NCBI GenBank assembly: GCA_030390025.1
Contig: CM059425.1
Location: 260,338,001 to 260,402,000, forward strand
Direction of reading: 5' to 3'
DNA length: 64,000 nucleotides
From: Squalus acanthias
Lineage: Eukaryota
A program made the position numbers and the translations under genes. The notes under the pieces are model-generated. The model did not search any database. It had not been told where the DNA came from and worked only from the letters and a program-made list of their open reading frames with translations. Below, in pieces: positions 1 through 47,261 of the stretch (the stretch's first letter is position 1; every line of letters begins with the position of its first letter).

Positions 1-152
1 CCTAACAGCACTGTGGGAGTACCTTCACCACACGGACTGCAGAGGTTCAAGAAGGTGGCTCACCACCACCTTCTTAAGGGCAACTAGGGATGGGCAATAA
101 ATGCTGGCCTTGCCAGCGACGCCCACAGACCAGAATAGAAAAAAATAATTAC

Positions 153-224
153 CTGTCTCAGCTTGCTGTGACTCCGTAAAATTAACAACACTGTAAACAC
201 CATCACTTCCAAGTTCTTGTGGAT
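153..224 (-). CDS. Gene A tail exon T5 (recent duplicate of T2): DPQELGSDGVYSVVNFTESQQAET
   Basis: tgtgtctttgacag|AT...ACAG|gtaatt, 72 nt. Flank 147-905 is nearly identical to about 15593-16350. Confidence 0.75.
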
Positions 225-3200
225 CTGTCAAAGACACAAAAATGTAAGAAAATATGGAACATGGATTTTTTTGACTGGAGTAACATAGGTGAAAGGACCA
301 CCATACAGGACCCCATCGAGGCTGGAAAAATAGAGGAGAAAATGAGCTGAATCACAAAGTAATGATTCGGGAAACGCCAAACTGAGCTTTTAAAAACTCT
401 CGGAAAACTCTTAGCTTTTGAGTTTTGCATCTTATCCGTGGCTCAGTTGGTAGCACTCTCACCTCAATGTCGGAAGACCATGGGCTCAAGTCCCACTCCA
501 GAGATTTGAGCACATAATCCAGACCGACATCCCCAGTGCAGTGCTGAGGGAGTGCTGCACTGTCGGAGGTGCCGTCTTTCGGATGAGACTTAAATTGAGG
601 CCCCGCCTGCTCTCTCAGGTGGAGGTAACAGATCCCATGGCCACTATATTGAAGAAGAGCAGGGGAGTTCTCCCAGGTGTCCTGGCCGATATACATTTCT
701 CAAACCGAAAACAGATTATCTGGTCATTATCACATTGCTGTTTGTGGGAGCTTGCTGTGCGCAAATTGGCTGCCACGTTTCCCACATTACAACAGTGACT
801 CCACTTCAAAAGTCATTCATTGTATATGAAGCGTTTTGTGAAATCCTGAGGTTGTGAAAGGTGCGACAGAAATACAAGTTCTTTCTTTAAAAGCCTGTAG
901 ATTGTAGGACGGGCCGACTCGGGGGGGGGACGGGTCGACTCGGGGGAGACGGGACGACTCGGGGGGGACGGGTGGACTCGGGGGGGGCGGGGGAGGGACA
1001 ACTCGGGGGGGGACGGGACGACTCGGGGGGGACGGGTGGACTCGGGAAGGCGGGGGGGGGGACAACTCGGGGGGGACGGGACGACTCGGGGGGGACGGGT
1101 GGACTCGGGGGGGGCGGGGGGGAAACTCGGGGGGGACGGGTGGACTCGGGGGGGACGGGTGGACTCGGGTAGGACGGGTGGACTCGGGGGGGACGGGACG
1201 ACTCGGGTGGGACGGGAGGACTCGGGGGGGACGGGACGACTCGGGGGGGACGGGTGGACTCGGGGGGGACGGGTGGACTCGGGGGGGACGGGTGGACTCG
1301 GGGGGGACGGGTGGACTCGGGTAGGACGGGTGGACTCGGGGGGGACGGGACGACTCGGGTGGGACGGGACGACTCGGGTGGGACGGGAGGACTCGGGGGG
1401 GACGGGACGACTCGGGGGGGACGGGTGGACTCGGGGGGGACGGGTGGACTCGGGGGGGACGGGAGGACTCGGGGGGGACGGGACGACTCGGGGGGGACGG
1501 GTGGACTCGGGGGGGACGGGAGGACTCGGGGGGGGACTGGACGACTCGGGGGGGACGGGACGACTCGGGGGGGACGGGACGACTCGGGGGGGACGGGACG
1601 ACTCGGGGGGGACGGGACGACTCGGGGGGGGACGGGACGACTCGGGTGGGACGGGAGGACTCGGGGGGGACGGGACGACTCGGGGGGGACGGGACGACTC
1701 GGGTAGGACGGGTGGACTCGGGGGGGACGGGTGGACTCGGGGGGGACGGGAGGACTCGGGGGGGACTGGACGACTCGGGGGGGACGGAACGACTCGGGGG
1801 GGACGGAACGACTCGGGTAGGACGGGACGACTCGGGGTGGCCGGGACGACTCGGGGGGGACGGGTGGACTCGGGGGGGACGGGTGGACTCGGGGGGGACG
1901 GGTGGACTCGGGGGGGACGGGTGGACTCGGGGGGGACGGGTGGACTCGGGGGGGACGGGTGGACTCGGGGGGGACGGGACGACTCGGGGGGAACGGGACG
2001 ACTCGGGGGGGACGGGACGACTCGGGTAGGACGGGACGGATGGACTCGTGGGGGGATGGGACGACTCGGGGGGGACGGGACGACTCGGGGGGGACGGGTG
2101 GACTTGGGTAGGACGGGACGGGTGGACTCGGGGGGGACGGGACGACTCGAGGGGGACGGGTGGACTCGGGGGGGACGGGTGGACTCGGGGGGGACGGGTG
2201 GACTCGGGGGGGACGGGTGGACTCGGGGGGGACGGGACGACTCGGGGGGGACGGGACGACTCGGGTGGGACGGGTGGACTCGGGGGGGACGGGTGGACTC
2301 GGGGGGGACGGGTGGACTCGGGGGGGACGGGTGGACTCGGGGGGGACGGGACGACTCGGGTGGGACGGGTGGACTCGGGTAGGACGGGTGGACTCGGGGG
2401 GGACGGGTGGACTCGGGGGGGACGGGTGGACTCGGGGGGGACGGGACGACTCGGGGGGGGACGGGACGACTCGGGTGGGACGGGTGGACTCGGGGGGGGA
2501 CGGGTGGACTCGGGGGGGACGAGACGACGCGGGGGGGACGGGACGACTCGGGTGGGACGGGACGACTCGGGGGGGACGGGACGACTCGGGGGGGACGGGA
2601 CGACTGGGGGGGGACGGGAGGACTCGGGGGGGACGGGGGGACTCGGGGGGGACGGGTGGACTCAGGTAGGACGGGTGGACTCGGGGGGGACGGGTGGACT
2701 CGGGGGGGACGGGACGACTCGGGGGGGACGGGACGACTCGGGGGGGGACGGGTGGACTCGGGGGGGACGGGACGACTCGGGGGGGACGGGTGGACTCGGG
2801 GGGGGACGGGTGGACTCACGGGGGACGGGTGGACTCGTGGGGGACGGGACGACTCGGGGGGGACGGGACGACTCGGCGGGGACGGGAGGACTCGGGGGGG
2901 ACGGGAAGACTCGGGGGGGACGGGACGACTCGGGGGGGACGGGACGACTCGGCGGGGACGGGAGGACTCGGGGGGGACGGGAAGACTCGGGGGGGACGGG
3001 ACGACTCGGGGGGGACGGGACGACTCGGGGGGGACGGGTGGACTCGGGGGGGACGGGTGGACTCGGGGGGGACGGGACGACTCGGGTAGGACGGGACGGG
3101 TGGACTCGGGGGGGGACGGGACGTCTCGGGGGGGACGGGACGACTCGGGGGGGACGGGAGGACTCGGGGGGGACTGGACGACTCGGGTGGGACGAGAGGA

Positions 3201-6200
3201 CTCGGGGGGGACGGGACGACTCGGGGGGGACGGGACGACTCGGGGGGGACGGGACGACTCGGGGGGGACGGGACGACTCGGGGGGGACGGGACGACTCGG
3301 GGGGGACGGGAGGACTCGGGGGGGACGGGACGACTCGGGGGGGACGGGTGGACTCGGGGGGGACGGGTGGACTCGGGTAGGACGGGAGGACTGGGGGGGG
3401 ACGGGACGACTCGGGGGGGACGGGAGGACTCGGGGGGGACGGAACGACTCGGGGTGGCCGGGACGACTCGGGGGGGACGGGTGGACTCGGGGGGGACGGG
3501 TGGACTCGGGGGGGGACGGGTGGACTCGGGGGGGACGGGTGGACTCGGGGGGGACGGGTGGACTCGGGGGGGACGGGTGGACTCGGGGGGGACGGGTGGA
3601 CTCGGGGGGGACGGGTGGACTCGGGGGGGACGGGTGGACTCGGGGGGGACGGGTGGACTCGGGGGGGACGGGACGACTCGGGTGGGACGGGTGGACTCGT
3701 GGGGGACGGGACGACTCGGGGGGAACGGGACGACTCGGGGGGGACGGGACGACTGGGGTAGGACGGGACGGGTGGACTCGGGGGGGACGGGACGACTCGA
3801 GGGGGACGGGTGGACTCGGGGGGGACGGGACGACTCGGGGGGGACGGGTGGACTCGGGGGGGACGGGACGACTCGGGGGGGACGGGTGGACTCGGGTTGG
3901 ACGGGTGGACTCGGGGGGGACGGGTGGACTCGGGGGGGACGGGAGGACTCGGGGGGGACGGGACGACTCGGGGGGGACCGGACGACTCGGGGGGGGGACG
4001 GGACGACTCGGGGGGACGGGAGGACTCGGGGGGGGGGACGGGACGACTCGGGGGGGACGGGAGGACTCGGGTGGGACGGGACGACTCGGGGGGGACGGGT
4101 GGACTCGGGGGGGGACGGGTGGACTCACGGGGGACGGGTGGACTCGCGGGGGACGGGACGACTCGGGGGGGACGGGTGGACTCGGGTGTGACGGGTGGAC
4201 TCGGGGGGGACGGGACGACTCGGGGGGGACGGGACGACTCGGGGGGGACGGGACGACTCGGGGGGGACGGGACGACTCGGGGGCGACGGGACGACTCGGG
4301 GGCGACGGGACGACTCGGGGGGGACGGGACGACTCGGGGGGGACGGGACGACTCGGGGGGGACGGGACGACTCGGGGGGGACGGGACGACTCGGGGGGGA
4401 CGGGTGGACTCGGCGGGGACGGGTGGACTCGGCGGGGACGGGAGGACTCGGGGGGGACGGGTGGACTCGGGGGGGACGGGTGGACTCGGGGGGGACGGGA
4501 CGACTCGGGTAGGACGGGACGGGTGGACTCGGGGGGGGGACGGGACGACTCGGGTAGGATGGGTGGACTCGGGGGGGACGGGACGACTCGGGGGGGACGG
4601 GTGGACTCGGGTAGGATGGGACGACTCGGGGGGGACGGGTGGACTCGGGGGGGATGGGACGACTCGTGGGGGACGGGTGGACTCGGGGGGGATGGGACGA
4701 CTCGGGGGGGACGGGACGACTCGGGTGGGACGGGACGGGTGGATTTGGGTAGGACGGGACGACTCGGGTAGGACGGGACGACTCGGGGGGGACGGGTGGA
4801 CTCGGGGGGGACGGGACGACTCGGGGGGGACGGGTGGACTCGGGTAGGACGGGAGGACTCGGGTGGGACGGGACGACTCGGGGGGGACGGGTGGACTCGG
4901 GGGGGACGGGACGACTCGGGGGGGACAAGTGGACTCGGGGGGGACGGGACGACTCGGGTAGGACGGGAGGACTCGGGGGGGACGGGACGACTCGGGTGGG
5001 ACGGGACGACTCGGGTAGGACGTGTGGACTCGGGGGGGACGGGTGGACTCGGGTGGGACGGGACGCCTCGGGTGGGACGGGACGACTCGGGGGGGACGTG
5101 TGGACTCGGGGGGGATGGGACGACTCGGGGGGGACGGGTGGACTGGGGGGATGGGACGACTCGGGGGGGACGGGTGGACTCGGGGGGGATGGGACGACTC
5201 GGGGGGGACGGGTGGACTCGGGGGGGGATGGGACGACTCGGGGGGGACGGGACGGGTGGACTCGGGTAGGACGGGACGGGTGGACTCGGGGGGGACGGGA
5301 CGACTCGGGGGGGACGGGACGAGTCGGGGGGGACGGGACGACTCGGGGGGGACGGGACGACTCGGGGGGGACGGGACGACTCGGGGGGGATGGGTGGACT
5401 CGGGGGGGACGGGACGACTCGGGGGGGATGGGACGACTCGGGGGGAACGGGACGACTCCGGGGGGGACGGGTGGACTCGGGGGGGACGGGACGACTCGGG
5501 GGGGATGGGACGACTCGGGGGGAACGGGACGACTCCGGGGGGGACGGGTGGACTCGGGGGGGACGGGTGGACTCACGGGGGACGGGTGGACTCGCGGGGG
5601 ACGGGAGGACTCGGGGGGGGACGGGTGGACTCGGGTAGGACGGGTGGACTCGGGTGGGACGGGTGGACTCGGGTTGGACGGGACGACTCGGGTGGGACGG
5701 GTGGACTCGGGTGGGACGGGTGGACTCGGGGGGGACGGGTGGACTCGGGGGGGACGGGTGGACTCGGGGGGGATGGGTGGACTCGGGTTGGACGGGACGA
5801 CTCGGGTTGGACGGGTGGACTCGGGTTGGACGGGACGACTCGGGTTGGACGGGTGGACTCGGGTAGGACGGGTGGACTCGGGGGGGACGGGACGACTCGG
5901 GGGGGACGGGACGACTCGGGTGGGACGGGTGGACTCGGCGGGGACTGGAGGACTCGGGGGGGACGGGAGGACTCGGGGGGGACGGGACGACTCGGGGGGG
6001 ACGGGACGACTCGGGGGGGACGGGTGGACTCGGGGGGGGACGGGTGGACTCGGGGGGGGGGACGGGACGACTCGGGGGGGACGGGAGGACTCGGGTGGGA
6101 CGGGACGACTCGGGGGGGACGGGACGACTCGGGGGGGACGGGTGGACTCGGGGGGGACGGGTGGACTCACGGGGGACGGGTGGACTCGCGGGGGACGGGA

Positions 6201-9200
6201 CGACTCGGGGGGGACGGGTGGACTCGGGTGTGACGGGTGGACTCGGGGGGGACGGGACGACTCGGGGGGGACGGGACGACTCGGGGGCGACGGGACGACT
6301 CGGGGGCGACGGGACGACTCGGGGGCGACGGGACGACTCGGGGGGGACGGGACGACTCGGGGGGGACGGGACGACTCGGGGGGGACGGGACGACTCGGGG
6401 GGGACGGGTGGACTCGGGGGGGACGGGACGACTCGGGTAGGACGGGAGGACTCGGGGGGGACGGGACGACTCGGGGGGGACGGGTGGACTCGGGGGGGAT
6501 GGGACGACTCGGGGGGGACGGGACGACTCGGGTGGGACGGGACGGGTGGATTTGGATAGGACGGGACGACTCGGGTAGGACGGGACGACTCGGGGGGGAC
6601 GGGTGGACTCGGGGGGGACGGGACGACTCGGGGGGGACGGGTGGACTCGGGTAGGACGGGAGGACTCGGGTGGGACGGGACGACTCGGGGGGGACGGGTG
6701 GACTCGGGGGGGACGGGACGACTCGGGGGGGGACAGGTGGACTCGGGTAGGATGGGACGACTCGGGGGGGACGGGACGACTCGGGGGGGACGGGACGAGT
6801 CGGGGGGGACGGGACGACTCGGGGGGGACGGGACGACTCGGGGGGGACGGGACGACTCGGGGGGGATGGGTGGACTCGGGGGGGACGGGACGACTCGGGG
6901 GGGACGGGTGGACTCGGGGGGGACGGGTGGACTCGGGGGGGGGACGGGACGACTCGGGGGGGACGGGAGGACTCGGGTGGGACGGGACGACTCGGGGGGG
7001 ACGGGACGACTCGGGGGGGACGGGTGGACTCGGGGGGGACGGGTGGACTCACGGGGGACGGGTGGACTCGCGGGGGACGGGACGACTCGGGGGGGACGGG
7101 TGGACTCGGGTGTGACGGGTGGACTCGGGGGGGACGGGACGACTCGGGGGGGACGGGACGACTCGGGGGCGACGGGACGACTCGGGGGCGACGGGACGAC
7201 TCGGGGGGGACGGGACGACTCGGGGGGGACGGGACGACTCGGGGGGGACGGGACGACTCGGGGGGGACGGGACGACTCGGGTGGGACGGGTGGACTCGGC
7301 GGGGACGGGACGACTCGGGGGGGGACGGGACGAATCGGGGGGGACGGGACGAATCGGGGGGGACGGGTGGACTCGGGGGGGACGGGTGGACTCGGGGGGG
7401 ACGGGACGACTCGGGTAGGACGGGACGGGTGGACTCGGGGGGGGACGGGACGACTCGGGGGGGACGGGTGGACTCGGGTAGGATGGGACGACTCGGGGGG
7501 GACGGGTGGACTCGGGGGGGATGGGACGACTCGGGGGGGACGGGACGACTCGGGTGGGACGGGACGGGTGGATTTGGATAGGACGGGACGACTCGGGGGG
7601 GACGGGTGGACTCGGGGGGGACGGGACGACTCGGGGGGGACGGGTGGACTCGGGTAGGACGGGAGGACTCGGGTGGGACGGGACGACTCGGGGGGGACGG
7701 GTGGACTCGGGGGGGACGGGACGACTCGGGGGGGACAGGTGGACTCGGGGGGGACGGGACGACTCGGGTAGGACGTGTGGACTCGGGGGGGACGGGTGGA
7801 CTCGGGTGGGACGGGACGCCTCGGGTGGGACGGGACGACTCGGGGGGGACGTGTGGACTCGGGGGGGACGGGTGGACTAGGGGGGGATGGGACGACTCGG
7901 GGGGGACGGGTGGACTCGGGGGGGATGGGACGACTCGGGGGGGACGGGTGGACTCGGGGGGGGATGGGACGACTCGGGGGGGACGGGACGGGTGGACTCG
8001 GGTAGGACGGGACGGGTGGACTCGGGTAGGACGGGACGACTCGGGGGGGACGGGACGACTCGGGGGGGACGGGACGAGTCGGGGGGGACGGGACGACTCG
8101 GGGGGGACGGGACGACTCGGGGGGGACGGGACGACTCGGGGGGGATGGGTGGACTCGGGGGGGACGGGACGACTCGGGGGGGATGGGACGACTCGGGGGG
8201 AACGGGACGACTCCGGGGGGACGGGACGACACGGGTAGAACGGGACAGGTGGACTCGGGGGGGACGGGAGGTCTCGGGTGGGACGGGTGGACTCGGGTTG
8301 GACGGGACGACTCGGGTGGGACGGGTGGACTCGGGGGGGACGGGTGGACTCGGGTAGGACAGGAGGACTCGGGGGGGACGGGTGGACTCGGGGGGGATGG
8401 GTGGACTCGGGGGGAACGGGAGGACTCGGGGGGGACGGAGGACTCGGGGGGAACGGGTGGACTCGGGTAGGACGGGTGGACTCGGGGCGGACGGGTGGAC
8501 TCGGGGGGGACGGGAGGACTCGGGTGGGACAGGTGGACTCGGGTAGGACGGGTGGACTCAGGGAAGACGGGTGGACTCGGGGGGGACGGGTGGACTCGGG
8601 TAGGACGGGTGGACTCGGGTGGGACGGGTGGACTCGGGGGGGACGGGTGGACTCGGGTAGGGCGGGTGGACTCGGGGGAGACGGGTGGACTCGGGGGAGA
8701 CGGGTGGACTCGGGTAGGACGGGATGGGACGGCTCGGGTTGGACGGGATGACTCGGGTGCCAAGGCCCTCAGCTCTGGAATTCCCTCCCTAAACCTCTCA
8801 GCCTCTCTTTCCTCCTTTAAGACGCTCCTTAAAACCTAACTCTTTGATCAAGCTTTTGGTCATCTGCCCTAATATCTCCTTGTGTGGCTCGGTGTCAAAT
8901 TTTTTTTTAGAGCGCTCCTGTGAAGCGTCTTGGGAGGTTTTACTACATTAAAGGCGCTATATAAAAGCAAGTTGTTGTTGTTGAGGGAGAAGATTGTCGG
9001 TTCAAGTCCTGCTCCAGCACTTGAGCACACAAGCCTAGGAATCCCAGCCTCACACTGGGCCATTGGGAGTGCGCTGGATCAGAACTTTCAGCCTCCACTT
9101 TAACCTCCCCATGACCACACCACAAATCCTGGAGCCGTGGACTCCCTACATTACAACAGTGCCCACACTTGAAAAAGCACGCCATTGGCTGTCAGGCGCT

Positions 9201-12200
9201 TTGGGACATCCTGAGGACGTGATAGGCGCTGTCGAAATGCAAGTCTTTCTTTCCATCGTAGGGATAGGTTCCTGTCTCTGTAGCCGAGGCTTGCCAACCC
9301 TCCAGCATTGTCCGGGAGTCTCCAGGAATGAGAAACTAATCTCCAGGACATCGCTGCAAGAAACTCAGGAGACCGATCACCGGGGCATTCAAAAACACTT
9401 CTTCAAAAAAATAATTCTTTGGAGGCTTTAGTTATAACAGTATCGGAGTATCGGAAACCATCGGTGCCAAGTCACCTGTTCCTCCCGAGCTCGCTACCCT
9501 CACCACACGTTACCTCTCAAATTACTCACATACTGCATCCCAAAATATCATTTTCTGTCAGAAATCCATCTAATTTGTATTTGAATGAATCAACACTAAC
9601 CACTTCCACCGTCTCCCGAGGGAACCTGTTCCATGGATTGGCCACTCGCTCACTGAAATATTGGCCTCGATTTTAAACCCCCCACGACAGGTGGGAGAGG
9701 GTCGGGGGCGGAGTCTAACACGTCGCGCACGGCAGCGGATATTGGTGCGTCCAAGTGTCCCGCCGCGGGGAGGCGGGTCACCTTCATTAACATATTTAAA
9801 TCCGGCTCTCACCGCAATTGGGAGCCCGATTTAAAACTCACAGCTGCGGCGTGGGGTTCCCGGGGTTGGGAAACCCGGCAGTGAAAGGGAGGCGGGATCT
9901 ACCGGCCCCACAAGGCAAGTGACTTTTACAGCACTGCTTGTGGGCCAGGAGGAGCAGGAGTGCTCCCCGCTCCCCCCGGCCCCACAAGGAAGCCTTTGGC
10001 CTCCCCCGACGATCGAGGGCACCTCCTCCTCCCTGCCGACCTCTCTCTCCCCCCCCAGTCCCAATGGCCTCTCTCTCTCTCCCCCCCCAGTCCCAATGGC
10101 CTCTCTCTCCCCCCCAGTCCCAATGGCCTCTCTCTCTCCCCCAGTCCCAATGGCCTCTCTCTCCCCCAGTCCCAATGGCCTCTCTCTCTCCCCCAGTCCC
10201 AATGGCCTCTCTCTCCCCCAGTCCCAATGGCCTCTCTCTCTCTCTCCCCCCCAGTCCAATGGCCTCTCTCCCCCCCAGTCCCAATGGCCTCTCTCCCCCC
10301 CCAGTCCCAATGGCCTCTCTCTCTCCCCCACAGTCCCAATGGCCTCTCTCCCCCCCAGTCCCAATGGCCTCTCTCTCTCCCCCACAGTCCCAATGGCCTC
10401 TCTCCCCCCCCAGTCCCAATGGCCTCTCTCTCTCTCTCCCCCAGTCCCAATGGCCTCTCTCCCCCCCCAGTCCCAATGGCCCTCTCTCCCCCCCCAGTCC
10501 CAATGGCCTCTCACTCTCTCTCTCCCCCCCAGTCCCAATGGCCTCTCTCTCTCTCCCCCCAGTGCCAATGGCCTCTCTCTCTCTCTCCCCCAGTCCCAAT
10601 GGCCTCTCTCTCTCTCTCTCCCACCCAGTCCCAATGGCCTCTCTCTCTCTCTCCCCCCCCCCCCCCCCCCCCCCCCCCCCAGTCCCAATGGCCTCTCTCT
10701 CTCTCTCTCTCCCAGCCCCTTTCTCTTTCCCTCGGTCTCGATCTCTCTGCTCGGAATCTGGGTTGGAAATAGAATGAAAAAATGAGAATGAGGAGCTGCC
10801 ATTAAATGCAGCAGGACCTCTGTCCCCGGCCTTGCCGGGTTCTTCAGCCGTGTTCAGCCTCCCCCCCACCCCATAAATATCGGGGCCATTGTTTCCGCAG
10901 ATTAGTTTTGTATTTACCCCCATTGAAGCTCAGGCCGTGTCCTCTGGGTCGACTGTTCTGGACACGGTGAAACAGCTCGTCACAGGTATCTACTTCCTTC
11001 AGAATGCTAAAATGAGGAATTGTATCACCCCTCAACCTTCTCTGTCCCAGTGAGAACTTGCCCCATTTACATCATCACTCCTCATAATCCAACCCCTCAT
11101 TCATTCCATGTACTAGGCTGTAATTGACCAACACTGAGTGATGGCACAATGTAAGAACGTTCAAGGGCCATTCTTGTTGTCTTACCCGTCTGTTGTGCTT
11201 GAGGTGGTTTGGGATTGTTGACAGTGCTATAGAGAACATCTTCTCCCTCCTGCGCATCTATCAAGACACAATCCATTATCTCCATAGCTGCGTCATAGAC
11301 AATAGAATTAGGAAACCAAATGCTCCGTTACTGACAATCTGTTCCATTGAACTGATGATTACATGACAGGCTAGATCCCAGTCAGGACAATCCCATTGTC
11401 TGATCAACCCGAAGGCCATTTAACACAAGAGCAACAAAATGTGCTCAGCAATGACCTTTTAAGACAAAGAGTCAGGATTTTGTGTTTTTAAAACAAACTT
11501 GGGAGATGGGGCAGAATTTCTCCGGGATTTGATCCCCGCAATTTCACCGGGATCGCTCCCGTCGGTGACCTCTGCCACTGACCCCCACCGGAGTGTGCAG
11601 GGTGAGTGGGAGGTCATGTGTGTTCCACATATCACCACTATGGGTAGCCCCGTACACTGCCAGTCTATAAAAGGCACGCTGTCATGCCAATTGTAGATAT
11701 GTGAAAGGTTTACTCTTTAATTCAAGGTAAGAATCATGTTTGGCTGCTAGCTTTTTGCTGCTTGCTCTGTATTCACCATTCCTTACCTGTCACTGCTTGG
11801 TGGGGTCTTAGACATTTAACAGTGCTGTAGACAGGGAGACTCTCAGACTCCTGTGGATCTGTAAAGGACACAGGCAGTTACTTCCTTCTTACATCCTCAT
11901 CGGCAAAACTTTGATTCAGTTTAATGGTATAATAATAATGAATTCAACAACAACTTGTATTTATATTGTGCCTTAACGTTCTTAGTTCTTTGAGGAGGTA
12001 ACGAGCAGGGTGGATAAGGGTTAAACAGTGGATGTGGTGTATTTGGATTTCCAGAAGGCATTCGATAAGGTGCCACATAAAAGGTTACTGCATAAGATAA
12101 GAGCTCACGGAATTGGGAGTAATATATTAGCATGGATAGAGAATTGGCTAACTAACAGAAAGCAGAGAGTCGGGATAAATGGGTCATTTTCCGGTTGGCA

Positions 12201-15200
12201 AAGGGTAACTAGTGGGGTGCCACAGGGATCGGTGCTGGGGCCTCAACTATTTACAATCTACATTAATGACTTGGATGAAGGGACCGAGTGTAATGTAGCC
12301 AAGTTTGCGGATGATACAAAGATGGGTGGGAAAGCAAGTTGTGCAGAGGACTCAAAGGGGGAAAAATTCAGCTGCTTGCGCCTCCCGTTAGCGCCTTAAG
12401 AGGGCGCTAATGGGGCGTAAAGCAGCTAACGCCCGGGCGCAGCGCCGCCCACGCCTCCCGAAAAATTTAGTGGGAGGTTAGCGGCGGCGGCAGCCGGTAG
12501 CGCCCTGTGGCGCTGCGCCGCCGGCGATGACGTCATCGCCGTGCGCAGCACCCCGCTCGCGCCCCGGCCGTGATCTTCAGTCGCGCCCCCTGATTTACCG
12601 CCAGATGCTATGTCCGACGGGTTCAGGGAGGCGTACGTGCGGCCGGGGCGGCGATATTTAAAGGGGAGGTGGCAGGCGGCCATTTTTGTTGCTGGCCGCC
12701 TGCCAGCACCTGCCCCCGGCCCCCGTGAAGCCCCCCCACCGTGAAGTGCCGGCTGCGCTCCAAGAGCCCGACACTTCTCTTGAGTGCCGGGCTCTTTTGC
12801 CGGCACTCCCGATCCCTGGGGGCCCAGCTGGGCCCCGGTTCGCGCTGCGCAGGGTCCCTCCCCTTTAAGAAGGGGAGGAAGGCCTGCAATACCGCGGCGC
12901 GACGTGCCGCAGTGCATGGCGCTGCGGCACGTAGCGCCAGGATATTCACTCGCAGCGCCCCAAGAGGGATGCGGGCTGCTTCCAGTTGCGCCCCGCTTCC
13001 CTCTTGGGGCGCAACCACTGAAGTTCCGGCGCGGGGCCGCTAATTTTTTCGGGGCGCTAAAAGTCGCGCCCCGGCGAGGTTAGCGCCCCAAATGGGGCGC
13101 GACTCAATTTTTACCCCAAAGAACCTGCAAAGGGATTTAGACAGGCTAAGTGAGTGGGCAAACATTTGGCAGATGGAGTATAATGTGGGAAAGTGTGAGG
13201 TTATACACTTTGGCAGGAAAAATTAAAAAGCAAATTATTATTTAAATGGAGAGAGATTACAAAATGCTACAGTTCAGAGGGACCTGGGGGTCCTTGTGCA
13301 TGAAACACAAAAAGTTAGCATGCAGGTACAGCAAGTAATTAGGAAGGCAAATGGAATGTTGGCCTTTATTGCAAAGGGGCTGGAGTATAAAAGCAGGGAA
13401 GTCCTGCTACAACTGTACAGGGTATTGGTGAGACCACACCTTGAGTACTGCGTACAGTTTTGGTCTCCTTATTTAAGGAAGGATATACTTGCATTGGAGG
13501 CAGTTCAGAGATGATTCACTAGGTTGATTCCTGAGATGAGGGGGTTAACTTATGAGGAAAGGTTGAGTAGGCTGTGCCTATACGCATTGGAATTTAGAAG
13601 AATGAGAGGGGATCTTATTGAAACATATAAGATACTGAGGGGGCTCGACAAGGTAGATGCAGAGAGGATGTTTCCCCTCGTGGGGAAATCTAGATCTCGG
13701 GGGCACAGTTTTAGAATAAAGCGTCGCCCTTTTAGAACTGAGATGAGGAGGAATTTCTTCTCTCAGAGGGTCATAAACCTTTGGAATCCTCTGCCCCAGA
13801 GAGCTGTGGAGGCTGGGTCATTAAATACATTTAAGGTGGAGATAGACAGATTTTTGCAAGATAAGGGAGTGAAGGGTTATGGGGAGCGGGCGGGGGAGTG
13901 GCTTTGAGCCCAAGATCAGCCATGATCTTATTGAATGGCGGAGCAGGCTCGAGGGGCCAAGTGGCCGATTCCTGCCCCTATTTCTTATGTTAGTTTAGTA
14001 AAACGTCCCAAGGCGCTTCACAGGAGCGATTATCAAACAAAATTTGACACCGAGCCACATAAGGAGAAATTAGAAAATTGGTCAGACATGCAGGTTTTAA
14101 GGAGCATCTTCAAGGAGGAGAGAGGCGGAGAGGTTTTGGGAGGGAATTCCGGGCCGAGGCAGCTGAAGGCACAGCCGCCAATGGTGCAGCGATGAATTTC
14201 GGGGATGCGCAAGAGGCCAGATTTGGAGGAGCGCAGAGATCCTTATTGTTGGAAATTGCTATATTCTTTGCTGTTTCATTAGTTAAAGCTAGTAGACAGG
14301 AACAAAAAGCCATCACACAAAGGCTAATGGAATCTGGAGCACTCGTTCAGTCCTGGGCACCGCACCTCAGGAAGGATATACTGGCCCTTGGAGGGGGAGC
14401 AGCGCAGATTCACCAGAATGATACTGGGGATTAGAGCGTTAAATTACGAGGTCAACTTGTATAAAAGTGGTTTTTATTCCCTTGACTATAGAAGGTTGAG
14501 GAGTGACCTCATCAAGGTGCTTGAAATGATGAAGGGATTCGATAGGATAGATACAGAGGAACAATTTCCACTGATGGGGGAGTCAAGAACGCGAGTATAT
14601 AATCTGAAAATGATGGCTAGACCATTTAGGAGGGAAATCAGGAAGCACGTTTCCACACAATGGGGAGTGGGAATCTGGAATTCTGGCCCCAATAAGGCTG
14701 TGGATGCTGGGACAGCTGGAGCTTTCCAGACTGAGATTGCTAGATTTCTGTTTGGTCAGGGTATCAAGAGATCTGGAACTAAGGCGGGTGAATGGAGTTA
14801 AGGTACAGAAGACTCTCCTGAATTCCCGATTGGATTTATTAGTGACTATCTCTTATTTATATTTTTGTATTCATTCACGGGATGTGGGCGTCGCCGGCAA
14901 GGCCAGCATTTATTGCCCATCCCTAATCGCTGAGAAGGTGGTGGTGGTGGTGAGCCCCCTTCTTGAATACATGAGTGGCTTTCAGAGGGCAGTTTAGAGT
15001 CAACCACGTTGCTGTGGGTCTGGAGTCAAATATAGGCCAGACCAGGTAAGGACGGCAGATTTCCTTCCCCTAAAGGACATTAGTGAACCAGATGGGTTTT
15101 TATGACAATCCGGTAGTTTCAGGGTCACTATTACTGATACTAGCTTTTTATTCCAGATTTATTTAATTGAATTTAAATTCCCCAGCTGCCGTGGTGGGAT

Positions 15201-18200
15201 TCAAACTCACGTCTCCGGATCATTAGGCCTCTGGATTACTAGTCTAGTGACATAACCACTATGCTACCGTACCCGATTTATGGCTCCTAGTTCTTGTCTC
15301 TCCCACAAATGGAAACATCTCCTTTATCACGATCCTATCAAACCCTTTCACAATGTTCAAGTATCAGGTCACCACCCAGTCTTCTTTCTTCCAATGAAAA
15401 GAGCCCCAGCCTGTTCAATCTTTCCTGATGGGTAGAACCCCTCAGTTCTGGTATCATTCCAGCAAATCTTTTTTTGTGCTTCCGATTCCCGAGTCCAAAT
15501 TGTTTCTGTAACTTGTGAGCAACAGTGGTCCCAGCACCGCTCCTTAACCGCTGCGCTATTTGCTGTGTTGTAGTTGCTTGTGGAGTCGCCTCATTACCTG
15601 TCTCAGCTTGCTGTGACTCCCTAAAATTAACAACACTGTAAACACCACCACTTCCAAGTTCTTGTGGATCTGTCAAAGACACAAAAATGTAAGAAAATAT
15701 GGAACATGGATTTTTTTGACTGGAGTAAAATAGGTGAAAGGACCATCGTACATGACCCCATCAAGGCTGGAAAAATAGAGGAGAAAATGAGCTGAATCAC
15801 AAAGTAATGATTTGGGGATCGCCAAACTGAGCTTTTAAAAACTCTCGGAAAACTCTTAGCTTTTGAGTTTTGCGGCTTATCCGTGGCTCAGTTGGTAGCA
15901 CTCTCACCTCAATGTCTGAAGACCATGGGCTCAAGTCCCACTCCAGAGATTTGAGCACATAATCCAGACCGACATCCCCAGTGCAGTGCTGAGGGAGTGC
16001 TGCACTGTCGGAGGTGCCGTCTTTCGGATGAGACTTAAATTGAGGCCCCACCTGCTCTCTCAGGTGGACGTAACAGATCCCATGACCACGATATTGAAGA
16101 AGAGCAGGGGAGTTCTCCCAGGTGTCCTGGCCGATATACATTTCTCAAACCGAAAACAGATTATCTGGTCATTATCACATTGCTGTTTGTGGGACCTTGC
16201 TGTGCGCAAATTGGCTGCCACGTTTCCCACATTACAACAGTGACTCCACTTCAAAAGTCATTCATTGTATATGAAGCGTTTTGTGAAATCCTGAGGTTGT
16301 GAAAGGTGCGACAGAAATACAAGTTCTTTCTTTAAAAGCCTGTAGATTGGAGGACGGGTGGACTCGTGGAGGACGGGTGGACTCGGGTAGGACGGGTGGA
16401 CTCGGGGGGCTGGGGGGACGGGACGACTCGGGTAGGACGGGTGGACTCGGGTAGGACGGGTGGACTCGGGGGGGCTGGGGGGACGGGACGACTCGGGTAG
16501 GACGGGTGGACTCGGGTAGGACGGGTGGACTCGGGTAGGACGGGACGACTCGGGTAGGACGGGTGGACTCGGGGGGGACGGGTGGACTCGGTGGGGATGG
16601 GTCGACTCGGGGGGGACGGGTGGACTCGGTGGGGACGGGTCGACTTGGGGGGGGGACGACTCGGGGGGGGACGACTCGGGGGTGGGGGGGGACGGGTGGA
16701 CTCGGGGCGGGGGATGGGTGGACTTGGGGGGACGGGACGGGTGGACTTGGGGGGGGGGGGGGACGGGTGGACTCGGGGGGGGAGAGGGGGGGACGGGTGG
16801 ACTTGGGGGGGGACGACTCAGGGGGGGAGGGTGGGACGGGACGACTCAGGGGGGGGACGGGTGGACTCGGGGGGGGGACGGGGGGACGGGACGACTCGGG
16901 GGGGGATGACTCGGGGGGGGGGGGAATATGACTCGGGGGGGGGGGGACGACTCGGGGGGGACGGGACGACTTGGGTAGACAATAAGTTCCATATTTTTGT
17001 TGTTTAGGAAACGAACGGGATCGATTTCCATCCCTGTTTTCGGGTGGGAACAGGGCCGTAGACAGATCAAAATTGGAGTGCAGAACACAGCGCCCCATTT
17101 CAACCGTCGTTCCACCGGCCGCTATTTAGATTGGGGCCTTCAGGTAGGCTGTCGAGGCTCGTGCCCGAAACAGGTGGGAGCCTCATTATACAAAGTAAAT
17201 CGAGGGTCCTCTGATGTCTCGGAAACCTCGATGCACCTTTCAAGTAGCAATGGGTCAGGACATCGATCAGCCTAACGGTCTGAAAGGGACCGCCGGAGGC
17301 TGCTCCAAAACCAGGGCAGTTAGAGTTTTATATCAGCATTAATGTTCCTCCTGGCCCCACAAAGATCAGCCCACCCAATGCCCTGTCGCCCTGTCGCCCT
17401 CCCCCGGGATCGCCCCCTTCCCCCGCTCCCCTACCAGGTCCCCACTTGCTCTGCTCCGTGGAGGAGCCGCTCCATTTCCCGATTGGCCAGTTGCTCCGAT
17501 CGGGCGGGCAACTCCTCTCAAATATGCGAATCTGGCCCGACCATCAAAATGGTTCAGTCCTCCGACCGCTTTCATTGGGCGGGAGGGCAGCGGGCTCGCT
17601 CCGACTACCCCCTGCCCAATGAAAGGGCTCGCACCAAAGTCGGCCCCAATGGGTTAGAATGGGAGACCAATCTTAGTTCCAACACAGGGATGGTGAAGGG
17701 AGGGTGGGGGGGGGAAGAGGTTAGAGAATGATGGGCCGAGACCAGGAGGAGTGGGCCTGGTGGGACCACAGCGAGAGCGGAGCAGTTAAAAGCAACAGTC
17801 CCGAGCGGCAGGAGCCCGAGACCGGGAGGAGTGGGCCTGGTGGGACCGCAGCGAGAGCGGAGCAGTTAAAAGCAACAGTCCCGAGCGGCAGGAGCCCGAG
17901 ACCGGGAGGAGTGGGCCTGGTGGGACCGCAGCGAGAGCGGAGCAGTTAAAAGGAGCAGTCCCGAGCGACAGGAGCCCGAGACCGGGAGGAGTGGGCCTGG
18001 TGGGACCGCAGCGAGAGCGGAGCAGTTAAAAGCAACAGTCCCGAGCGGCAGGAGCCCGAGACCGGGAGGAGTGGGCCTGGTGGGACCGCAGCGAGAGCGG
18101 AGCAGTTAAAAGGAGCGGCAGCAACTCAACAGAGGCAGCTTTTGAAAAAGTGACGTCAGAGTAAAAAAAGTGACGTCGGCACAAGGGAAGGAGCTGATTG

Positions 18201-24200: not shown

Positions 24201-27200
24201 GTGAAGGGGTCGGCCATTTAGGACTGAGATGAGGAGAAATTTCTTCACTCAGGGGGTTGTGAATCTTTGGAATTTTCTGCCCCAGAGGGCTGTGAATGCT
24301 GAGTCTTTTATATATTCAAGGCTGAGATCAATAGATTTTGGGACTCTTGGGGAATCAAGGGATATGGGGATCGGGCGGGAAAGTGGAGTTGAGGTCGAAG
24401 ATCAGCCATGATCTTATTGAATGGCGGAGCAGGCTCGAGGGGCCATATGGCCTCCTCCTGCTCCTAATTCTTATGTTCTTGCGTATCAATTTGTTTAACT
24501 TGTGTGTCCTATCCTTGGGCACGAGAGGTGTTACAAGAGTCTCCCCAGATATGGGAGCAGTATTGAAAAATCTTGGATGGATTAGGCTTCACAAAGAGTG
24601 AAGAGTTGTCGAGGGGAAAAGAAGCATGGAGAAAGAATCCAACCCGCTGAGAGGCAACGTCAGTGATGGAGGGGTTGTAGGCATTCCATTTAATTTTACA
24701 GGAGATAATCAGGCCAAAATGGCATTAAATGAAGAAGGATGAAGGGTGGATCCATCAAAGACTGGAAGTAGTAGCAGATGGTGGAACTCGAGGGACAAAG
24801 GAGGGTATTTTCACCTTCACCACTTGGGCAGTAAACTGGTGAAGAGAATCACCCACCCGTTATAGAACCCGCTCAGACTGAGATCGATAGGCTTTTGTTG
24901 GGTAAGGGTACCAGGGGACAAGGAGTCAAGGCGGGTAAATGCTGAGGTACAGATCAGCCATGATCTGATCGAATAGTGGAACAGGCTCGAGGGGCTGAAT
25001 GGCCTTTTGAACACGGGTTTTAAGCTTAAGTGTGTATTTCAAAGAATGTTCTCAATGCAAAGCGGGAGTTGTGAGTGGATTTGTCTCATTACCTGTCTCT
25101 GCTTGCTGTGACACCGTATCATTAGCAACACTGTTAACAGGAACACCTCCAGGTTCTCGTGGATCTATCAAAGACACAGAAACATAAGAAAGTATTTCTG
25201 TAGAAATCAATCGAAATGATAATCAGGCGGGCGGGCTCTATAACGGGTGGGTGATCTGCTCCACCAGTTTACCGTCCAAGGAATACCCTCCACACTCCCC
25301 CCACCCTGAGTAGATCTAGCGATCCAGCTATTGTGCTGTGCGTGGAATTGCGACCGTGTTCCAGCCCGACAAACCTCCGAGATCTCTGTGCTCCTCCAAT
25401 TCTGACCTCTTGCGCGTTCCCGATTTCCATCGTTCCACCATTGGCGGCCGTTCCTTCAGCCGCCTGGGCCTGAAACTCTGGAATTCCCTCCCTAAACCTC
25501 TCCGCCTCTCTACCTCTCACTCCTCCTTTAAGCGGAGATGCCGGTGTTGGACTGGGGTGGACAAAAGTGAGAAGTCGCACAACACCAGGTTATAGACTTC
25601 ACCTGACGAAGGAGCAGCGCTCCGAAAGCTTGTGATTTCAAATAAAGCTGTTGGACTATAACCTGGTGTTGTGCGACTTCTCACATTTGTCCTCCTTTAA
25701 GACCCTCCTTAAAACCTACCTCTTTGATCAATCTTTCCTAATATCTCATTATGTGGCTCAGTGTCAAATATTGTTTGATAATCGCTCCTGTGAAGGGTCT
25801 TGGGATGTTTTACTACGTTAAAGGTGCTATATAAATACAAGTTGTTGTTGTTTTGTGCACTCGGAATGTGTGAGCTGAAGGGACCTGTAGAGGAGAATTA
25901 ACAGAAAAAGAGTTGGACAGGGTTTGGGTGATAAGTGGAAGAGAGGACTGATTTGGGGAAAGAACAAAGTGGGAAAGGTTCTTGGGTTGAAGGGACAAGA
26001 CTCTGAAGATGAGCCCTCATCTACCGCATGGAGCAATGTCTGGGAAACTAGATAGCCATGAACGTGACTGTGGTGGAAGACCTCATGCCCCAACAACCTG
26101 CGCCCTGTCCAATGAGGCGCCATGCCAGGACCTTTGGCTCATCTCTTTCCCCTTGACTCTCAGTGCTATGTATTGAGACTCTGCTGGCTGTAGTTTCTGC
26201 TGCTAGCTCTGCATTCTTCAGTCTTGCCCGCCTCTGCTAGGTGGGGCACTTGCCCAGTAACGGTGGGGCAGGGAGCAACACTTCCAGGGCTGGGTTCTAC
26301 TGCTCAGGGCGGAGGTCTGGTGGGACGGGAGTTCCGACCGCTCTCCCCCTCTCCGACCCGTTTCCTCAGGTCAGAGTTCGTTTGATACGCACGACAGGCT
26401 TTTAAAATATTAATTCTGAGGATATGGGCGACGCTGGCAAGGCCGGCATTGATTGCCCATCCCGACAAGGTGCTGATACATCTGATGGCCTGTGGCTGAT
26501 GGAATTCAATGTCGGGAAGTGTGAGGTCATCCACTGTGGACCTAAGAAAGATAGATCAGAGTATTTTATAAATCACACAAGAACTGCGGAGGAGCAGAGA
26601 GATTTGGGGTCCTGGGAAAGAAATCACTAAAAGCTGGTGGACAGGGACAAAAATTAACGAGAAAGGCCAATGGGATGTTGGCCTTTATCTGGAGGAGTCC
26701 GGATTACAAAGGGGTTACAGTTGTATAAAGCTCTGGTTAGACAACATCTGGAGTAACTGCGTCCAGTCCTGGGCACCGCACCTCAGGAAGAATATAGTGA
26801 CCTCGGAGGGGGAGCAGCTCAGATTTAACCAGAATGATACCAGGGCTACAAGGTTAAATTATGAGGACAGGTCACACAGACTCGGCTTGTATTCCCTTGA
26901 ATATGGAAGATTAAGAGGTGATCTAATTGAGGTGTTTAAGATGATTAAAGGAGTTGAAAGGGTAGATAGAGAGAAACTATTTCCTCTGGTGGGGGTAGTC
27001 CAGCATAAGGGGGGCATAACCTTAAAATTAGAGCCAGGCCGTTCAGGGGTGATGCCAGGAAGCACTTCTTTGCATAAAGGGCAGTGGAAATCTGGAACTC
27101 TCTCCCCCCAAAAAGCTGTTGAGGCTGGGGGGTCAATTGAAAACTTCAAAATTCAAGATTGATTGATTTTTGTTAGGCAAGTGTATTAAGGGTTAGGGAA

Positions 27201-40375: not shown

Positions 40376-41100
40376 ATCTTAGCAGGTTCCTCTAATGAGG
40401 CCATATGGGTAGAACTTAAAAACAAAAAGGGGGCAAGTACTTTGCTGGGAGTGTACTATAGGCCCCAAACAGTCAGCGGGAGATAGAGGAACAGATATGT
40501 AGGCAAATTTCAGAGAAGTGTAGAAATAATAGGGTAATAATAGGAGGGGATTTCAACTTCCCCAATATTAACTGGGATAGTCAGAGTGTGAAAGGCTTAG
40601 AGGGTGCGCAATTCTTAAAGTGCATCCAGGAGAGCTTTTTGAGCCAGCATGTAGAAAGTCCATCAAGAGAGGGGGCGGTACTGGACCTAATTCTAGGGAA
40701 TGTAGCCGGGCAAGTGGTAGAAGTGTTAGTAGGAGAGCATTTTGGTGACAGTGACCATAATTCGGTGAGATTTAAGGTAGTCATGGAAAAGGACAAAGAT
40801 GGACCGGAAATAAAGGTTCTAAATTGGGGGAAGGCCGATTTTAACATGATAAGGCAGGATCTGGCCAAAGTGGACTGGGATCAGCTTTTTGTAGGAAAAT
40901 CCATATCAGAGCAGTGGGAGTCTTTCAGAAAGGAAATAGAGAGAGTACAACGGCAGCATGTTCCCGTAAAGGTCAAGGGTGGGACCAACAAGTCCAGGGA
41001 ACCCTGGGTGTCAAGGGATATACGAGAATGGATTAGGAAAAAAAGGAAGGCTTTTGGCAGATACAAAGGACTAAAAACAGTGGAAGCCCTAGAGGAGTAT

Positions 41101-46779: not shown

Positions 46780-47261
46780 TTACTTTACCTGTTCCGCATC
46801 ATCAGAACCAGCAGCTGAAAACATTACTATCTGTGAAGATGCCACAGTATTACCATGATGTCCCACGCCAGTAGAGCTTCCATTGTGAATCTTCAACCTC
46901 CAGATAGTCAAAGCAATTGAAAGAAAGAAGATAATTGAAATGGAGGTTCGAATGTAGAGGTCGATGTTCAACTTGTCCTTGTCATCAGCGGGGAAGTGGA
47001 TCTGACGGATGTCACTCCCGTGTTCATTTACAGCCACACAGCTGTAGTTTCCTCTCAGCGTTGGGTTAAGAATCTCTCCCACAGTTTGATGTTTGTCTGG
47101 CACTCGTGTGACTGTCGTGCTACTGCTGTCCACGGGCAGTGCGCTGTTTTCAGGGTCGATCCATGTGATGTTTGCGGGTGGCTCCCCTTCAACCTTGCAC
47201 ACGATGGTGTCTCCAGTTATATTGTCGGTCACAACCGATAGATCCAGGGTGGTGGCTGGGG
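46780..47261 (-). CDS. Gene B exon 4: C2-set domain, TM LYIRTSISIIFFLSIALTIW, Tyr-free tail
   Basis: Same acceptor as gene A. Arg codon at 46948-46950. 3' end uncertain because of possible cryptic donors near 46853 and 46788. Confidence 0.82.

What the first reader, a model, noticed from the sequence alone, without database searches (positions are those of the whole stretch)
153..25164. Cytoplasmic tail assembled from a tandem array of 72-nt phase-1 tyrosine-motif cassette exons
Seen: five homologous 72-nt exons (25093-25164, 15598-15669, 11787-11858, 11186-11257, 153-224). Each has a tgtgtc-(t/c)tt..ag acceptor, begins with (G)AT=Asp and ends ..AC(A/G)G|gtaa. Motifs in order: PVNSVA (no Tyr), GVYSVV, PVYSTV, VLYSTV (canonical ITIM), GVYSVV. 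No stop codon is reached in the window. Inference: symmetric exons let alternative splicing or copy-number change set the number of SH2-docking motifs. The regular ~24-residue spacing could suit tandem-SH2 phosphatases. Typical Siglec tails carry about two motifs.
Basis: partly seen in the sequence, partly recalled or inferred. Interest (0 to 1): 0.85.

Follow-up and report, generated by a model that had tools for sequence, protein, structure and literature searches.

The report
Shark Siglec-15-like receptor's modular tyrosine tail
Five related 72-base exons on the minus strand each add one 24-residue module, most with a tyrosine motif, to the tail of a shark Siglec-15-like immune receptor, a real but familiar way of building an inhibitory receptor tail.

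Summary
Five homologous 72-nt phase-1 exons lie at the stated coordinates, with AG acceptors and GTAA donors. A profile search finds no others in the window.

They follow the signal, V, V and Ig+TM exons of a Siglec-15-like gene. All of those exons are phase 1 too.

A RefSeq model from the shark Heptranchias perlo has the same module order, including a fifth module that copies the second. Its isoforms X1 and X2 differ by exactly one 24-residue module.

Contigs of three RNA-like runs cover cassettes 3 and 4 exactly and leave the intron between them empty. No junction row was displayed.

- Only cassette 4 is a canonical ITIM.
- Cassettes 2, 3 and 5 carry YSxV with G or P at position -2.
- Cassette 1 has no tyrosine.
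- Cassettes 2 and 5 sit in a young duplication: the unique intron is 97.6% identical, and it ends in a 19-nt minisatellite.

This design is already known from PECAM-1, which has many short, alternatively spliced tail exons. I rate it a new member of a known kind, of moderate interest. The joins 27379→25164 and into cassette 5, any isoforms in this genome, and SH2 binding remain untested.

The parts
30629..30677 (-). Signal-peptide exon of gene A. ATG at 30677, donor AAC|gtacgt, phase 1.
   Evidence: tblastn match to the N-terminus of the H. perlo protein. Sequence and phase read.
29230..29622 (-). V1 exon (393 nt, phase 1-1). V-set domain with a CRVDF motif.
   Evidence: Pfam V-set E 1.4e-9. 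Best PDB match is human Siglec-15, 7zoz_A, E 1.9e-19, with CRVdF aligned to CRVeF. Boundaries.
28147..28515 (-). V2 exon (369 nt, phase 1-1). Second V-set domain, with CHVHI where V1 has CRVDF.
   Evidence: Pfam V-set E 1e-15. Boundaries. Aligned to the H. perlo V2.
27379..27753 (-). Ig (C2/I-like) plus transmembrane exon (375 nt, phase 1-1). The TM segment has no charged residue. The exon ends ..RLKR + G before gtaagc.
   Evidence: phmmer shows 79-80% identity to the shark proteins P0001 and P0002.
27314..27378 (-). Read-through of the 27379 donor. It would add about 21 residues and a TAG stop, giving a possible short-tail isoform.
   Evidence: ORF. The peptide resembles the terminal peptides of short-tailed relatives P0004 and P0013 and of gene B.
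25093..25164 (-). Tail cassette 1 (72 nt, phase 1-1). Motif PVNSVA, no tyrosine.
   Evidence: 75% identical to module 1 of H. perlo, which carries His at the same place.
15598..15669 (-). Tail cassette 2. Motif GGVYSVV, with Gly at Y-2.
   Evidence: Matches H. perlo module 2. The X2 contig covers about 44 of the exon's 46 bases that lie in the last bin, which cannot be told apart from cassette 5.
11787..11858 (-). Tail cassette 3. Motif LPVYSTV, with Pro at Y-2.
   Evidence: 69% identical to H. perlo module 3. RNA-like contigs cover exactly 72 bases in this bin.
11186..11257 (-). Tail cassette 4. Motif DVLYSTV, a canonical ITIM (VxYxxV).
   Evidence: 64% identical to H. perlo module 4. Contig coverage starts and stops at the exon ends in X2 and X3.
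153..224 (-). Tail cassette 5. Motif DGVYSVV. A young copy of cassette 2, 70 of 72 nt identical.
   Evidence: The H. perlo model also has a fifth module that copies its second.
148..1569 (-). Duplicated segment paired with 15593-16975. It holds the cassette, 5 nt of its donor and the upstream intron, running into the minisatellite.
   Evidence: Self-BLAST gives 88% over 1.4 kb. The unique intron part, 225-900 against 15670-16345, is 660 of 676 identical with no gaps.
923..8724 (.). 19-nt G+C-rich minisatellite (about 405 copies) in the intron upstream of cassette 5. The sister copy at 16352-16875 has about 26 copies.
   Evidence: Tandem Repeats Finder. GC 0.76-0.77 and GC skew +0.52.

Best explanation
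The five exons are genuine cytoplasmic-tail cassettes of a minus-strand type I membrane receptor gene (gene A). Its exon order is signal peptide, V-set, V-set, Ig+TM, then at least five 24-residue tail modules. The gene continues beyond the left edge of the window.

The ectodomain is Siglec-15-like. The transmembrane segment is uncharged.

The tail was built by repeated duplication of one symmetric phase-1 72-nt exon that encodes an acidic lead-in, an xVYSxV-type tyrosine motif and a QQAET-like end.

Because every cassette is phase 1-1, any of them can be skipped or duplicated without breaking the frame. The number of phosphotyrosine docking sites can therefore change, both by splicing and over evolution.

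Inferred, not shown: once phosphorylated, the tyrosines, spaced 23-25 residues apart, recruit SH2-domain phosphatases and make this the inhibitory partner of the short-tailed paralog with a charged TM (gene B) 20 kb upstream.
For: Sequence: five homologous exons with intact splice signals and one shared open frame. All upstream exons are phase 1 and the 27379 donor is AG|GTAAGC.

Domains: V-set, V-set, then Ig_2/Ig_3. V1's best solved relative is human Siglec-15, E 1.9e-19, with CRVdF aligned to CRVeF.

Relatives:
- Of 120 representative proteins with E<=0.001, the two best are shark RefSeq proteins with 79-80% identity.
- H. perlo XP_067838218 has modules in the same order as here. Modules 1, 3 and 4 match one-to-one at 75%, 69% and 64%. 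Its module 5 copies its module 2. A 12-residue VYENC.. piece and a terminal AAIYAAV piece follow.
- Its isoforms X1 (656 aa) and X2 (632 aa) differ only by module 2, which is 24 residues.
- Heterodontus, Mobula and Callorhinchus relatives carry 3, 4 and 1-2 such modules.

RNA: in runs X2 and X3 the binned depths equal one contig's depth (6.21 and 3.46) multiplied by 70+2 bases over 11186-11257 and by 72 bases in the bin holding 11787-11858. Depth is 0 across 11412-11723. The DNA-like run X9 covers the intron evenly.

Known parallel: PECAM-1 has ITIMs at Y663 and Y686, eight alternatively spliced cytoplasmic exons, and loses SHP-2 binding without exon 14 (passages read).
Against: No junction row for any cassette was displayed. 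Repeats filled the joint table, with 800 rows not shown. Splicing of cassettes 3 and 4 is therefore inferred from depth arithmetic.

The joins 27379→25164, 25093→15669 and 11186→224 were not tested. The runs are only guessed to be RNA.

X3 has no coverage over cassette 2's bin. X1's depth there is not interpretable.

Only cassette 4 fits the ITIM signature [I/V/L/S]xYxx[L/V] (signature quoted). Cassettes 2, 3 and 5 have G, P and G at Y-2. Cassette 1 lacks tyrosine.

The cassette 2/5 exon is no better conserved than its intron (2 of 72 against 16 of 676 differences, P=0.76). That comparison therefore gives no sign of selection.

No protein of this species was found in the databases. The H. perlo isoforms are automatic RefSeq models, and I could not see their RNA support.
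Confidence: 0.85

Rival explanations
1. One or both members of the cassette 2/5 pair are unused by-products of a recent segmental duplication, or of an assembly error around the minisatellite. The working tail would then have fewer modules than five.
For: The two copies and 676 nt of intron are about 97.5% identical. The duplication ends only 5 nt past the donor, in unrelated repeat sequence. X3 shows no coverage over cassette 2's bin although cassettes 3 and 4 are covered. Cassettes 1, 2 and 5 have GTAAT donors lacking the consensus G at +5.
Against: Both copies keep the open frame, the acceptor and the GTAAT donor. The H. perlo RefSeq model includes both a second and a fifth, identical module. 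The X2 contig depth fits about 44 of the exon's 46 bases in cassette 2's bin.
Confidence: 0.12
2. The main product of gene A is a short-tailed protein made by reading through the 27379 donor to the TAG at 27314-27316. The cassette tail would be a minor isoform.
For: The read-through is open for about 21 codons. It resembles the terminal peptides of the short-tailed relatives P0004 and P0013 and of gene B.
Against: The donor AG|GTAAGC is close to consensus. The closest relatives, H. perlo and Heterodontus, are modelled as splicing right after the equivalent KK/KR. Cassettes 3 and 4 are present in RNA-like contigs of three runs from two studies.
Confidence: 0.15
3. The YSxV motifs act mainly as YxxΦ sorting or endocytosis signals, or bind other SH2 adaptors, rather than as phosphatase-recruiting ITIMs. 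More modules would then tune trafficking rather than inhibition.
For: Three of the four tyrosine modules lack the hydrophobic or Ser residue at Y-2 that the ITIM signature requires (signature). YSVV and YSTV fit YxxΦ (recalled consensus). Relatives also carry a VYxN piece, which resembles a Grb2-type motif (recalled).
Against: Cassette 4, and the terminal VIYATV/VIYAVV pieces of relatives, are canonical ITIMs. The 23-25 residue spacing equals that of the PECAM-1 ITIM pair. A paralog with a charged TM sits next door, as is usual for inhibitory/activating pairs.
Confidence: 0.2

Closest known systems
[quoted passage not shown]
   Same: The Ig+TM exon is 79% identical. The tail modules run in the same order: a module without tyrosine, three modules with tyrosine, then a copy of module 2. 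X1 and X2 differ by one 24-residue module.
   Different: X1 and X2 have an extra copy of the V2 domain. A 12-residue VYENC.. piece and a terminal AAIYAAV piece are present there but not found in this window. These are automatic models with no published study found. Whether the gene is an ortholog or a paralog of gene A is not settled.
Siglec-15 (human, PDB 7ZOZ)
   Same: It is the best solved relative of V1, E 1.9e-19, including the CRV(E/D)F stretch. That stretch holds the arginine needed for sialic acid binding: R143 is named in the passage read, but its place in this motif is recalled. Both have a V-set domain followed by an Ig domain and one TM.
   Different: Siglec-15 is an activating receptor with a TM lysine that pairs with DAP10/DAP12, and it has no ITIM. 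Gene A has a second V domain, an uncharged TM and a long multi-tyrosine tail.
PECAM-1 (CD31)
   Same: Its cytoplasmic domain is split over eight short, alternatively spliced exons. It has two ITIMs 23 residues apart (Y663, Y686). Skipping one exon (exon 14) removes SHP-2 binding (passages). This is the same design logic.
   Different: PECAM-1 did not appear among the 120 hits of the Ig+TM exon search (no direct comparison was made). Its ectodomain has six Ig domains. Its tail exons are not copies of one another (recalled).
CD22 (Siglec-2) and teleost leukocyte immune-type receptors
   Same: They are Ig-superfamily inhibitory receptors whose tails carry several tyrosine motifs rather than the usual one or two (recalled; for LITRs I saw only a search listing, PMC4810170).
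   Different: Their ectodomains and motif sequences differ. Neither was compared here by any tool.

Membership tests
Siglec family, Siglec-15-like branch | N-terminal V-set domain most similar to Siglec V-sets | tested here: met
   Pfam V-set E 1.4e-9. The top PDB hit is Siglec-15 at E 1.9e-19, followed by CD33, Siglec-8, Siglec-10 and Siglec-5.
Siglec family, Siglec-15-like branch | Conserved arginine needed for sialic acid binding (R143 in human Siglec-15) | tested here: met
   CRVdF in V1 aligns to CRVeF of 7zoz_A. That this Arg is R143 rests on recall plus the passage. V2 has His at the same place.
Siglec family, Siglec-15-like branch | Transmembrane lysine that pairs with DAP10/DAP12 (activating type) | tested here: not met
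   The TM of gene A has no charged residue. The paralog gene B has an Arg near the start of its TM. Gene A is therefore not a Siglec-15 ortholog in the functional sense.
Siglec family, Siglec-15-like branch | Binding of sialylated glycans | not testable with these tools
   Needs a glycan array or binding assay.
ITIM-bearing inhibitory immunoreceptors | Type I membrane protein with an uncharged TM and at least one [I/V/L/S]xYxx[L/V] motif in the tail | tested here: met
   Cassette 4 has VLYSTV with Val at Y-2. The signature is quoted. Cassettes 2, 3 and 5 fail at Y-2, and cassette 1 has no tyrosine.
ITIM-bearing inhibitory immunoreceptors | Tyrosine phosphorylation and recruitment of SHP-1, SHP-2 or SHIP | not testable with these tools
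   Inference only. The 23-25 residue spacing equals that of the PECAM-1 ITIM pair.
Receptors with modular, alternatively spliced cytoplasmic exons (PECAM-1 type design) | Tail encoded by several short frame-symmetric exons | tested here: met
   Five 72-nt phase 1-1 exons.
Receptors with modular, alternatively spliced cytoplasmic exons (PECAM-1 type design) | Isoforms that include or skip single tail exons | tested here: inconclusive
   Seen in RefSeq models of a related shark, where X1 and X2 differ by 24 residues. In this genome only exon-exact coverage of cassettes 3 and 4 was seen, with no isoform evidence.

The most novel reading that the evidence does not exclude
Cassettes 2 and 5 are kept nearly identical within each species by gene conversion or unequal exchange seeded by the 19-nt minisatellite in their upstream introns.

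In this window the exon pair shares 70 of 72 nt and the adjoining intron is 97.6% identical. In H. perlo the two modules are identical in protein. Between the two species the module differs at about a third of its residues.

If this is right, the number of tyrosine modules, and so the inhibitory strength of the receptor, would vary in copy number within shark populations and also be adjustable by splicing.
Probability: 0.2. Interest if true: 0.6.

Novelty: new member of a known kind. Interest (0 to 1): 0.4.

Why it matters
Siglec-15 is described as an ancient, purely activating Siglec (passages read). These shark genes show the same kind of ectodomain paired with a long inhibitory-type tail, next to a short-tailed copy with a charged TM. 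That would make the Siglec-15 lineage a paired-receptor family in cartilaginous fishes.

The tail gives a clean example of how symmetric-exon duplication builds and resizes a signalling tail. Orthologous modules are shared between distant sharks, and one module has been duplicated recently.

The practical value is for annotation. Automatic pipelines name these genes inconsistently: relatives are called Siglec-12, Siglec-15, CXADR-like, kalirin-like and MXRA5-like. Small cassettes separated by 10-kb repeat-filled introns are also easy to miss.

The design itself is not new to immunologists.

Tried and rejected
More cassettes. An nhmmer profile run with --max on both strands found only the five. 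The weak hit at 26287-26221 (E 0.15) was viewed and dropped. Gene B has none.

Missing tail pieces. I searched the six-frame translation for motifs resembling the relatives' terminal IYAxV exon and their VYxN exon, and found none. I also scanned 225-11185 for AG..GT phase-1 units of 24-60 nt with a Y.N motif. That gave 7 candidates: 6 inside the minisatellite and 1 without similarity. I conclude those pieces lie left of the window or are absent.

Selection test on the cassette 2/5 pair. The exon is no more conserved than the intron (P=0.76), so the test says nothing about constraint.

Junction evidence. My single read-laying run on 11100-15750 was swamped by LINE and SINE repeats. The joint, loose-end and piece tables showed only repeat rows, so I fell back on arithmetic from the binned depths. 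In hindsight, a stretch without 11900-15550 would have been cleaner.

Proteins of this species. None appeared in the representative search, in the tail-region search with P0002 (3 hits, candidates 295-938 aa), or in the Ig+TM ORF search (4 hits, candidates 86-275 aa). These searches are blind outside their length ranges.

H. perlo locus DNA was needed to test conversion against independent duplication.

A transposable-element origin for the cassettes is rejected. There are five copies, all in one gene and one orientation, and they are conserved as protein modules in other sharks.

Literature. Four searches listed no paper on shark or chimaera Siglec-15-like receptors with multi-tyrosine tails. 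In PMC7226832 I read only passages, and it does not mention cartilaginous fishes. Subscription journals and supplements were not visible.

Exons were searched singly.

Full report
**1. Observation**

- Each follows a pyrimidine-rich ..tgtgtc..ag acceptor, begins with AT, and ends AC(A/G)G before gtaa.
- The phase-1 frame is open in 5 of 5. The other frames are open in 4 of 5 and 0 of 5.
- That frame gives 24-residue modules with PVNSVA, GVYSVV, PVYSTV, VLYSTV and GVYSVV.
- A profile of the five finds them at E 6e-18 to 1e-26. The next hit on either strand has E 0.15, and on viewing it I saw no homologous exon-like unit.
- Pairwise nucleotide identity runs from 39 of 75 to 70 of 72.

**2. The gene**

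The exons upstream on the same strand are as follows:

| Exon | Coordinates | Length |
|---|---|---|
| Signal peptide | 30677-30629 | 49 nt |
| V1 (V-set) | 29622-29230 | 393 nt |
| V2 (V-set) | 28515-28147 | 369 nt |
| Ig + transmembrane | 27753-27379 | 375 nt |

- All of them are phase 1. The last ends AGAG|gtaagc, so its final G plus the AT of a cassette makes Asp.
- Pfam gives V-set, V-set and Ig_2/Ig_3.
- V1's best solved relative is human Siglec-15 (7zoz_A, E 1.9e-19), with CRVdF aligned to CRVeF. CD33 and other Siglecs follow.
- The transmembrane segment of this gene (gene A) has no charged residue.

A paralog, gene B, lies at 46.8-52.4 kb and is 94-97% identical over several kb.
- It has lost the 27379-type donor through a small deletion.
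- It reads on into a short tail.
- It has an Arg near the start of its TM.
- It has no cassettes.

Exons were searched one at a time.

**3. Relatives**

The Ig+TM exon was scored against 1.84 billion representative proteins. It gave 120 hits at E<=0.001. The two best are RefSeq proteins:
- Heterodontus francisci, XP_067884866, 80% identical.

After its TM, the H. perlo protein has these pieces in order:
- a module without tyrosine (PVHSVV);
- a PVYSII module;
- an ILYSSV module;
- a TLYSTV module;
- a 12-residue VYENC.. piece;
- a second PVYSII module identical to the first;
- a terminal AAIYAAV piece.

tblastn against the window pairs its modules with the window's cassettes:

| H. perlo module | Window cassette | Identity |
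|---|---|---|
| 1 | 1 | 75% |
| 2 | 5 and 2 | 68% and 64% |
| 3 | 3 | 69% |
| 4 | 4 | 64% |

So the series of at least four modules is shared between two shark lineages and appears to be old. Whether the two genes are orthologs is not settled.

In H. perlo the first residue of a module is Asn after an exon ending in A and Asp after one ending in G. This is what a phase-1 split codon predicts.

Isoforms X1 (656 aa) and X2 (632 aa) of the same gene differ only by module 2, exactly 24 residues. Cassette skipping is therefore already modelled in a relative. I could not see the RNA support for those automatic models.

Module numbers in other relatives:
- Heterodontus has three modules, only one with tyrosine, plus a terminal VIYATV.
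- Mobula birostris has four modules plus AAIYATV.
- Callorhinchus has one or two VIYSVV modules, a VYANS.. piece and a terminal VIYAVV.

**4. Expression**

No run on record as RNA holds the stretch. Eight small runs guessed to be RNA hold 8-18% of its sampled words. My one read-laying run used 11100-15750 with X1, X2, X3 and X9.
- LINE and SINE repeats filled the joint, loose-end and piece tables. No joint between cassettes was displayed, and 800 rows were not shown.
- The binned depths are still informative. In X2 they equal one contig's depth (6.21) multiplied by 70 bases in bin 11100-11255, 2 bases in bin 11256-11411, and 72 bases in bin 11724-11879.
- In X3 the same holds, with depth 3.46.
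- Depth is 0 in all three RNA-like runs across 11412-11723.
- The distances from variant positions to the piece ends (10 at 11195, 22 at 11236) place the ends at 11186 and 11257.
- X9 behaves like DNA of a relative. It covers exon and intron evenly at 20-30.

Cassettes 3 and 4 are therefore present, without their intron, in RNA-like contigs of three runs from two studies. This is an inference from arithmetic, not a displayed junction.

For cassette 2, X2's depth fits about 44 of the exon's 46 bases in that bin. X3 has none and X1 is not interpretable. The joins 27379→25164 and 11186→224 were not tested.

**5. The cassette 2/5 pair**

- Segment 148-1569 matches 15593-16975.
- The unique part of the upstream intron is 660 of 676 identical with no gaps, and the exons are 70 of 72 identical. 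The exon is not better kept than the intron (P=0.76).
- Homology stops 5 nt after the donor.
- Upstream, both copies run into a 19-nt G+C-rich minisatellite. One copy has about 26 units and the other about 405.
- Because H. perlo also has a fifth module identical to its second, there are two possibilities. Either an old duplication is kept alike within each species by conversion, or the duplication happened twice.

**6. Mechanism**

Shown: a type I receptor whose tail is built from frame-symmetric homologous exons, with module number differing among relatives and between isoforms of one relative.

Inferred:
- The tyrosines sit 24, 23 and 25 residues apart. This is the same spacing as the PECAM-1 ITIM pair Y663/Y686.
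- PECAM-1's eight cytoplasmic exons are alternatively spliced, and loss of exon 14 removes SHP-2 binding.
- By analogy, the tail would recruit tandem-SH2 phosphatases, and gene A would be the inhibitory partner of gene B.

Against a simple reading:
- Only cassette 4 fits the ITIM signature [I/V/L/S]xYxx[L/V] (signature quoted).
- Cassettes 2, 3 and 5 have G, P and G at Y-2.
- Cassette 1 has Asn where the others have Tyr. H. perlo has His there, and the Heterodontus module also lacks tyrosine. It looks like a conserved spacer without tyrosine.
- YSxV also fits a sorting signal (recalled consensus).
- A short-tail isoform by read-through of 27379 is possible.

**7. Known or new**

- Siglec-15 is described as activating, with a TM lysine conserved from fish to mammals and no ITIM (passages read). 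Gene A fails that feature, so I class it as Siglec-15-like and not as a Siglec-15 ortholog.
- Four literature searches listed no paper on such receptors in cartilaginous fishes.
- RefSeq already holds automatic models of them under inconsistent names.
- A modular, alternatively spliced ITIM tail is a known design.

I rate this a new member of a known kind, interest 0.4.

The bolder reading is minisatellite-linked conversion or copy-number variation of the tyrosine modules. It is not excluded, and I give it a probability of about 0.2.

Supplements of papers were closed. None was needed for a claim made here.

Noticed in passing
window 46783-52426 (minus strand): Gene B is a paralog of gene A with the same signal, V1, V2 and Ig+TM exons. 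A small deletion removes the 27379-type donor, so the frame runs on into a short tail ending ..AAGSDDAEQVK. The TM start carries an Arg. The tail end resembles that of a Pristis pectinata relative, P0005 (..TAGSGDVGQVK). This suggests an old, conserved activating-type tail.
   Followed up: partly
window 923-8724 and 16352-16975: A 19-nt G+C-rich minisatellite (consensus unit) has about 405 copies in one intron and about 26 in its duplicated sister intron. GC is about 0.77 and GC skew about +0.52 on the plus strand. The G-rich strand is therefore the template strand of this gene. Any effect on transcription or splicing is unknown.
   Followed up: partly
window 27314-27378: Read-through of the Ig+TM donor is open for about 21 codons. 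It is similar to the C-terminal peptides of short-tailed relatives (KRGxxHxxxSxxG..). The donor may therefore lie inside what was once a terminal coding exon.
   Followed up: partly
window 28147-28515 versus 29230-29622: V2 has His (CHVHI) where V1 has the Siglec-type Arg (CRVDF). Only V1 looks able to bind sialic acid in the usual way.
   Followed up: partly
window 35413-38139 and 57485-60210: A 2.7-kb inverted pair is 99.3% identical and has reverse-transcriptase-like ORFs. Many other LINE-like fragments are present, for example 11981-14000, 41099-42983 and 61756-63639. Their very high depth in the RNA-like runs suggests transcribed or abundant repeats.
   Followed up: no
window 47634-49122 and 53194-54681: A 1.5-kb inverted repeat (96% identical) lies around gene B's upstream exons. 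It has no counterpart at the matching place in gene A.
   Followed up: no
window 10040-10701, 17736-18112, 39703-40375: Three further tandem arrays were found, with periods of 27, 80 and 83 nt. The first two lie in introns of the tail region and the third lies between the two genes.
   Followed up: no
proteins P0001, P0005, P0134: Relatives of this family are named inconsistently by automatic annotation: CXADR-like membrane protein, matrix-remodeling-associated protein 5-like, kalirin-like, and Siglec-12 or Siglec-15.
   Followed up: no
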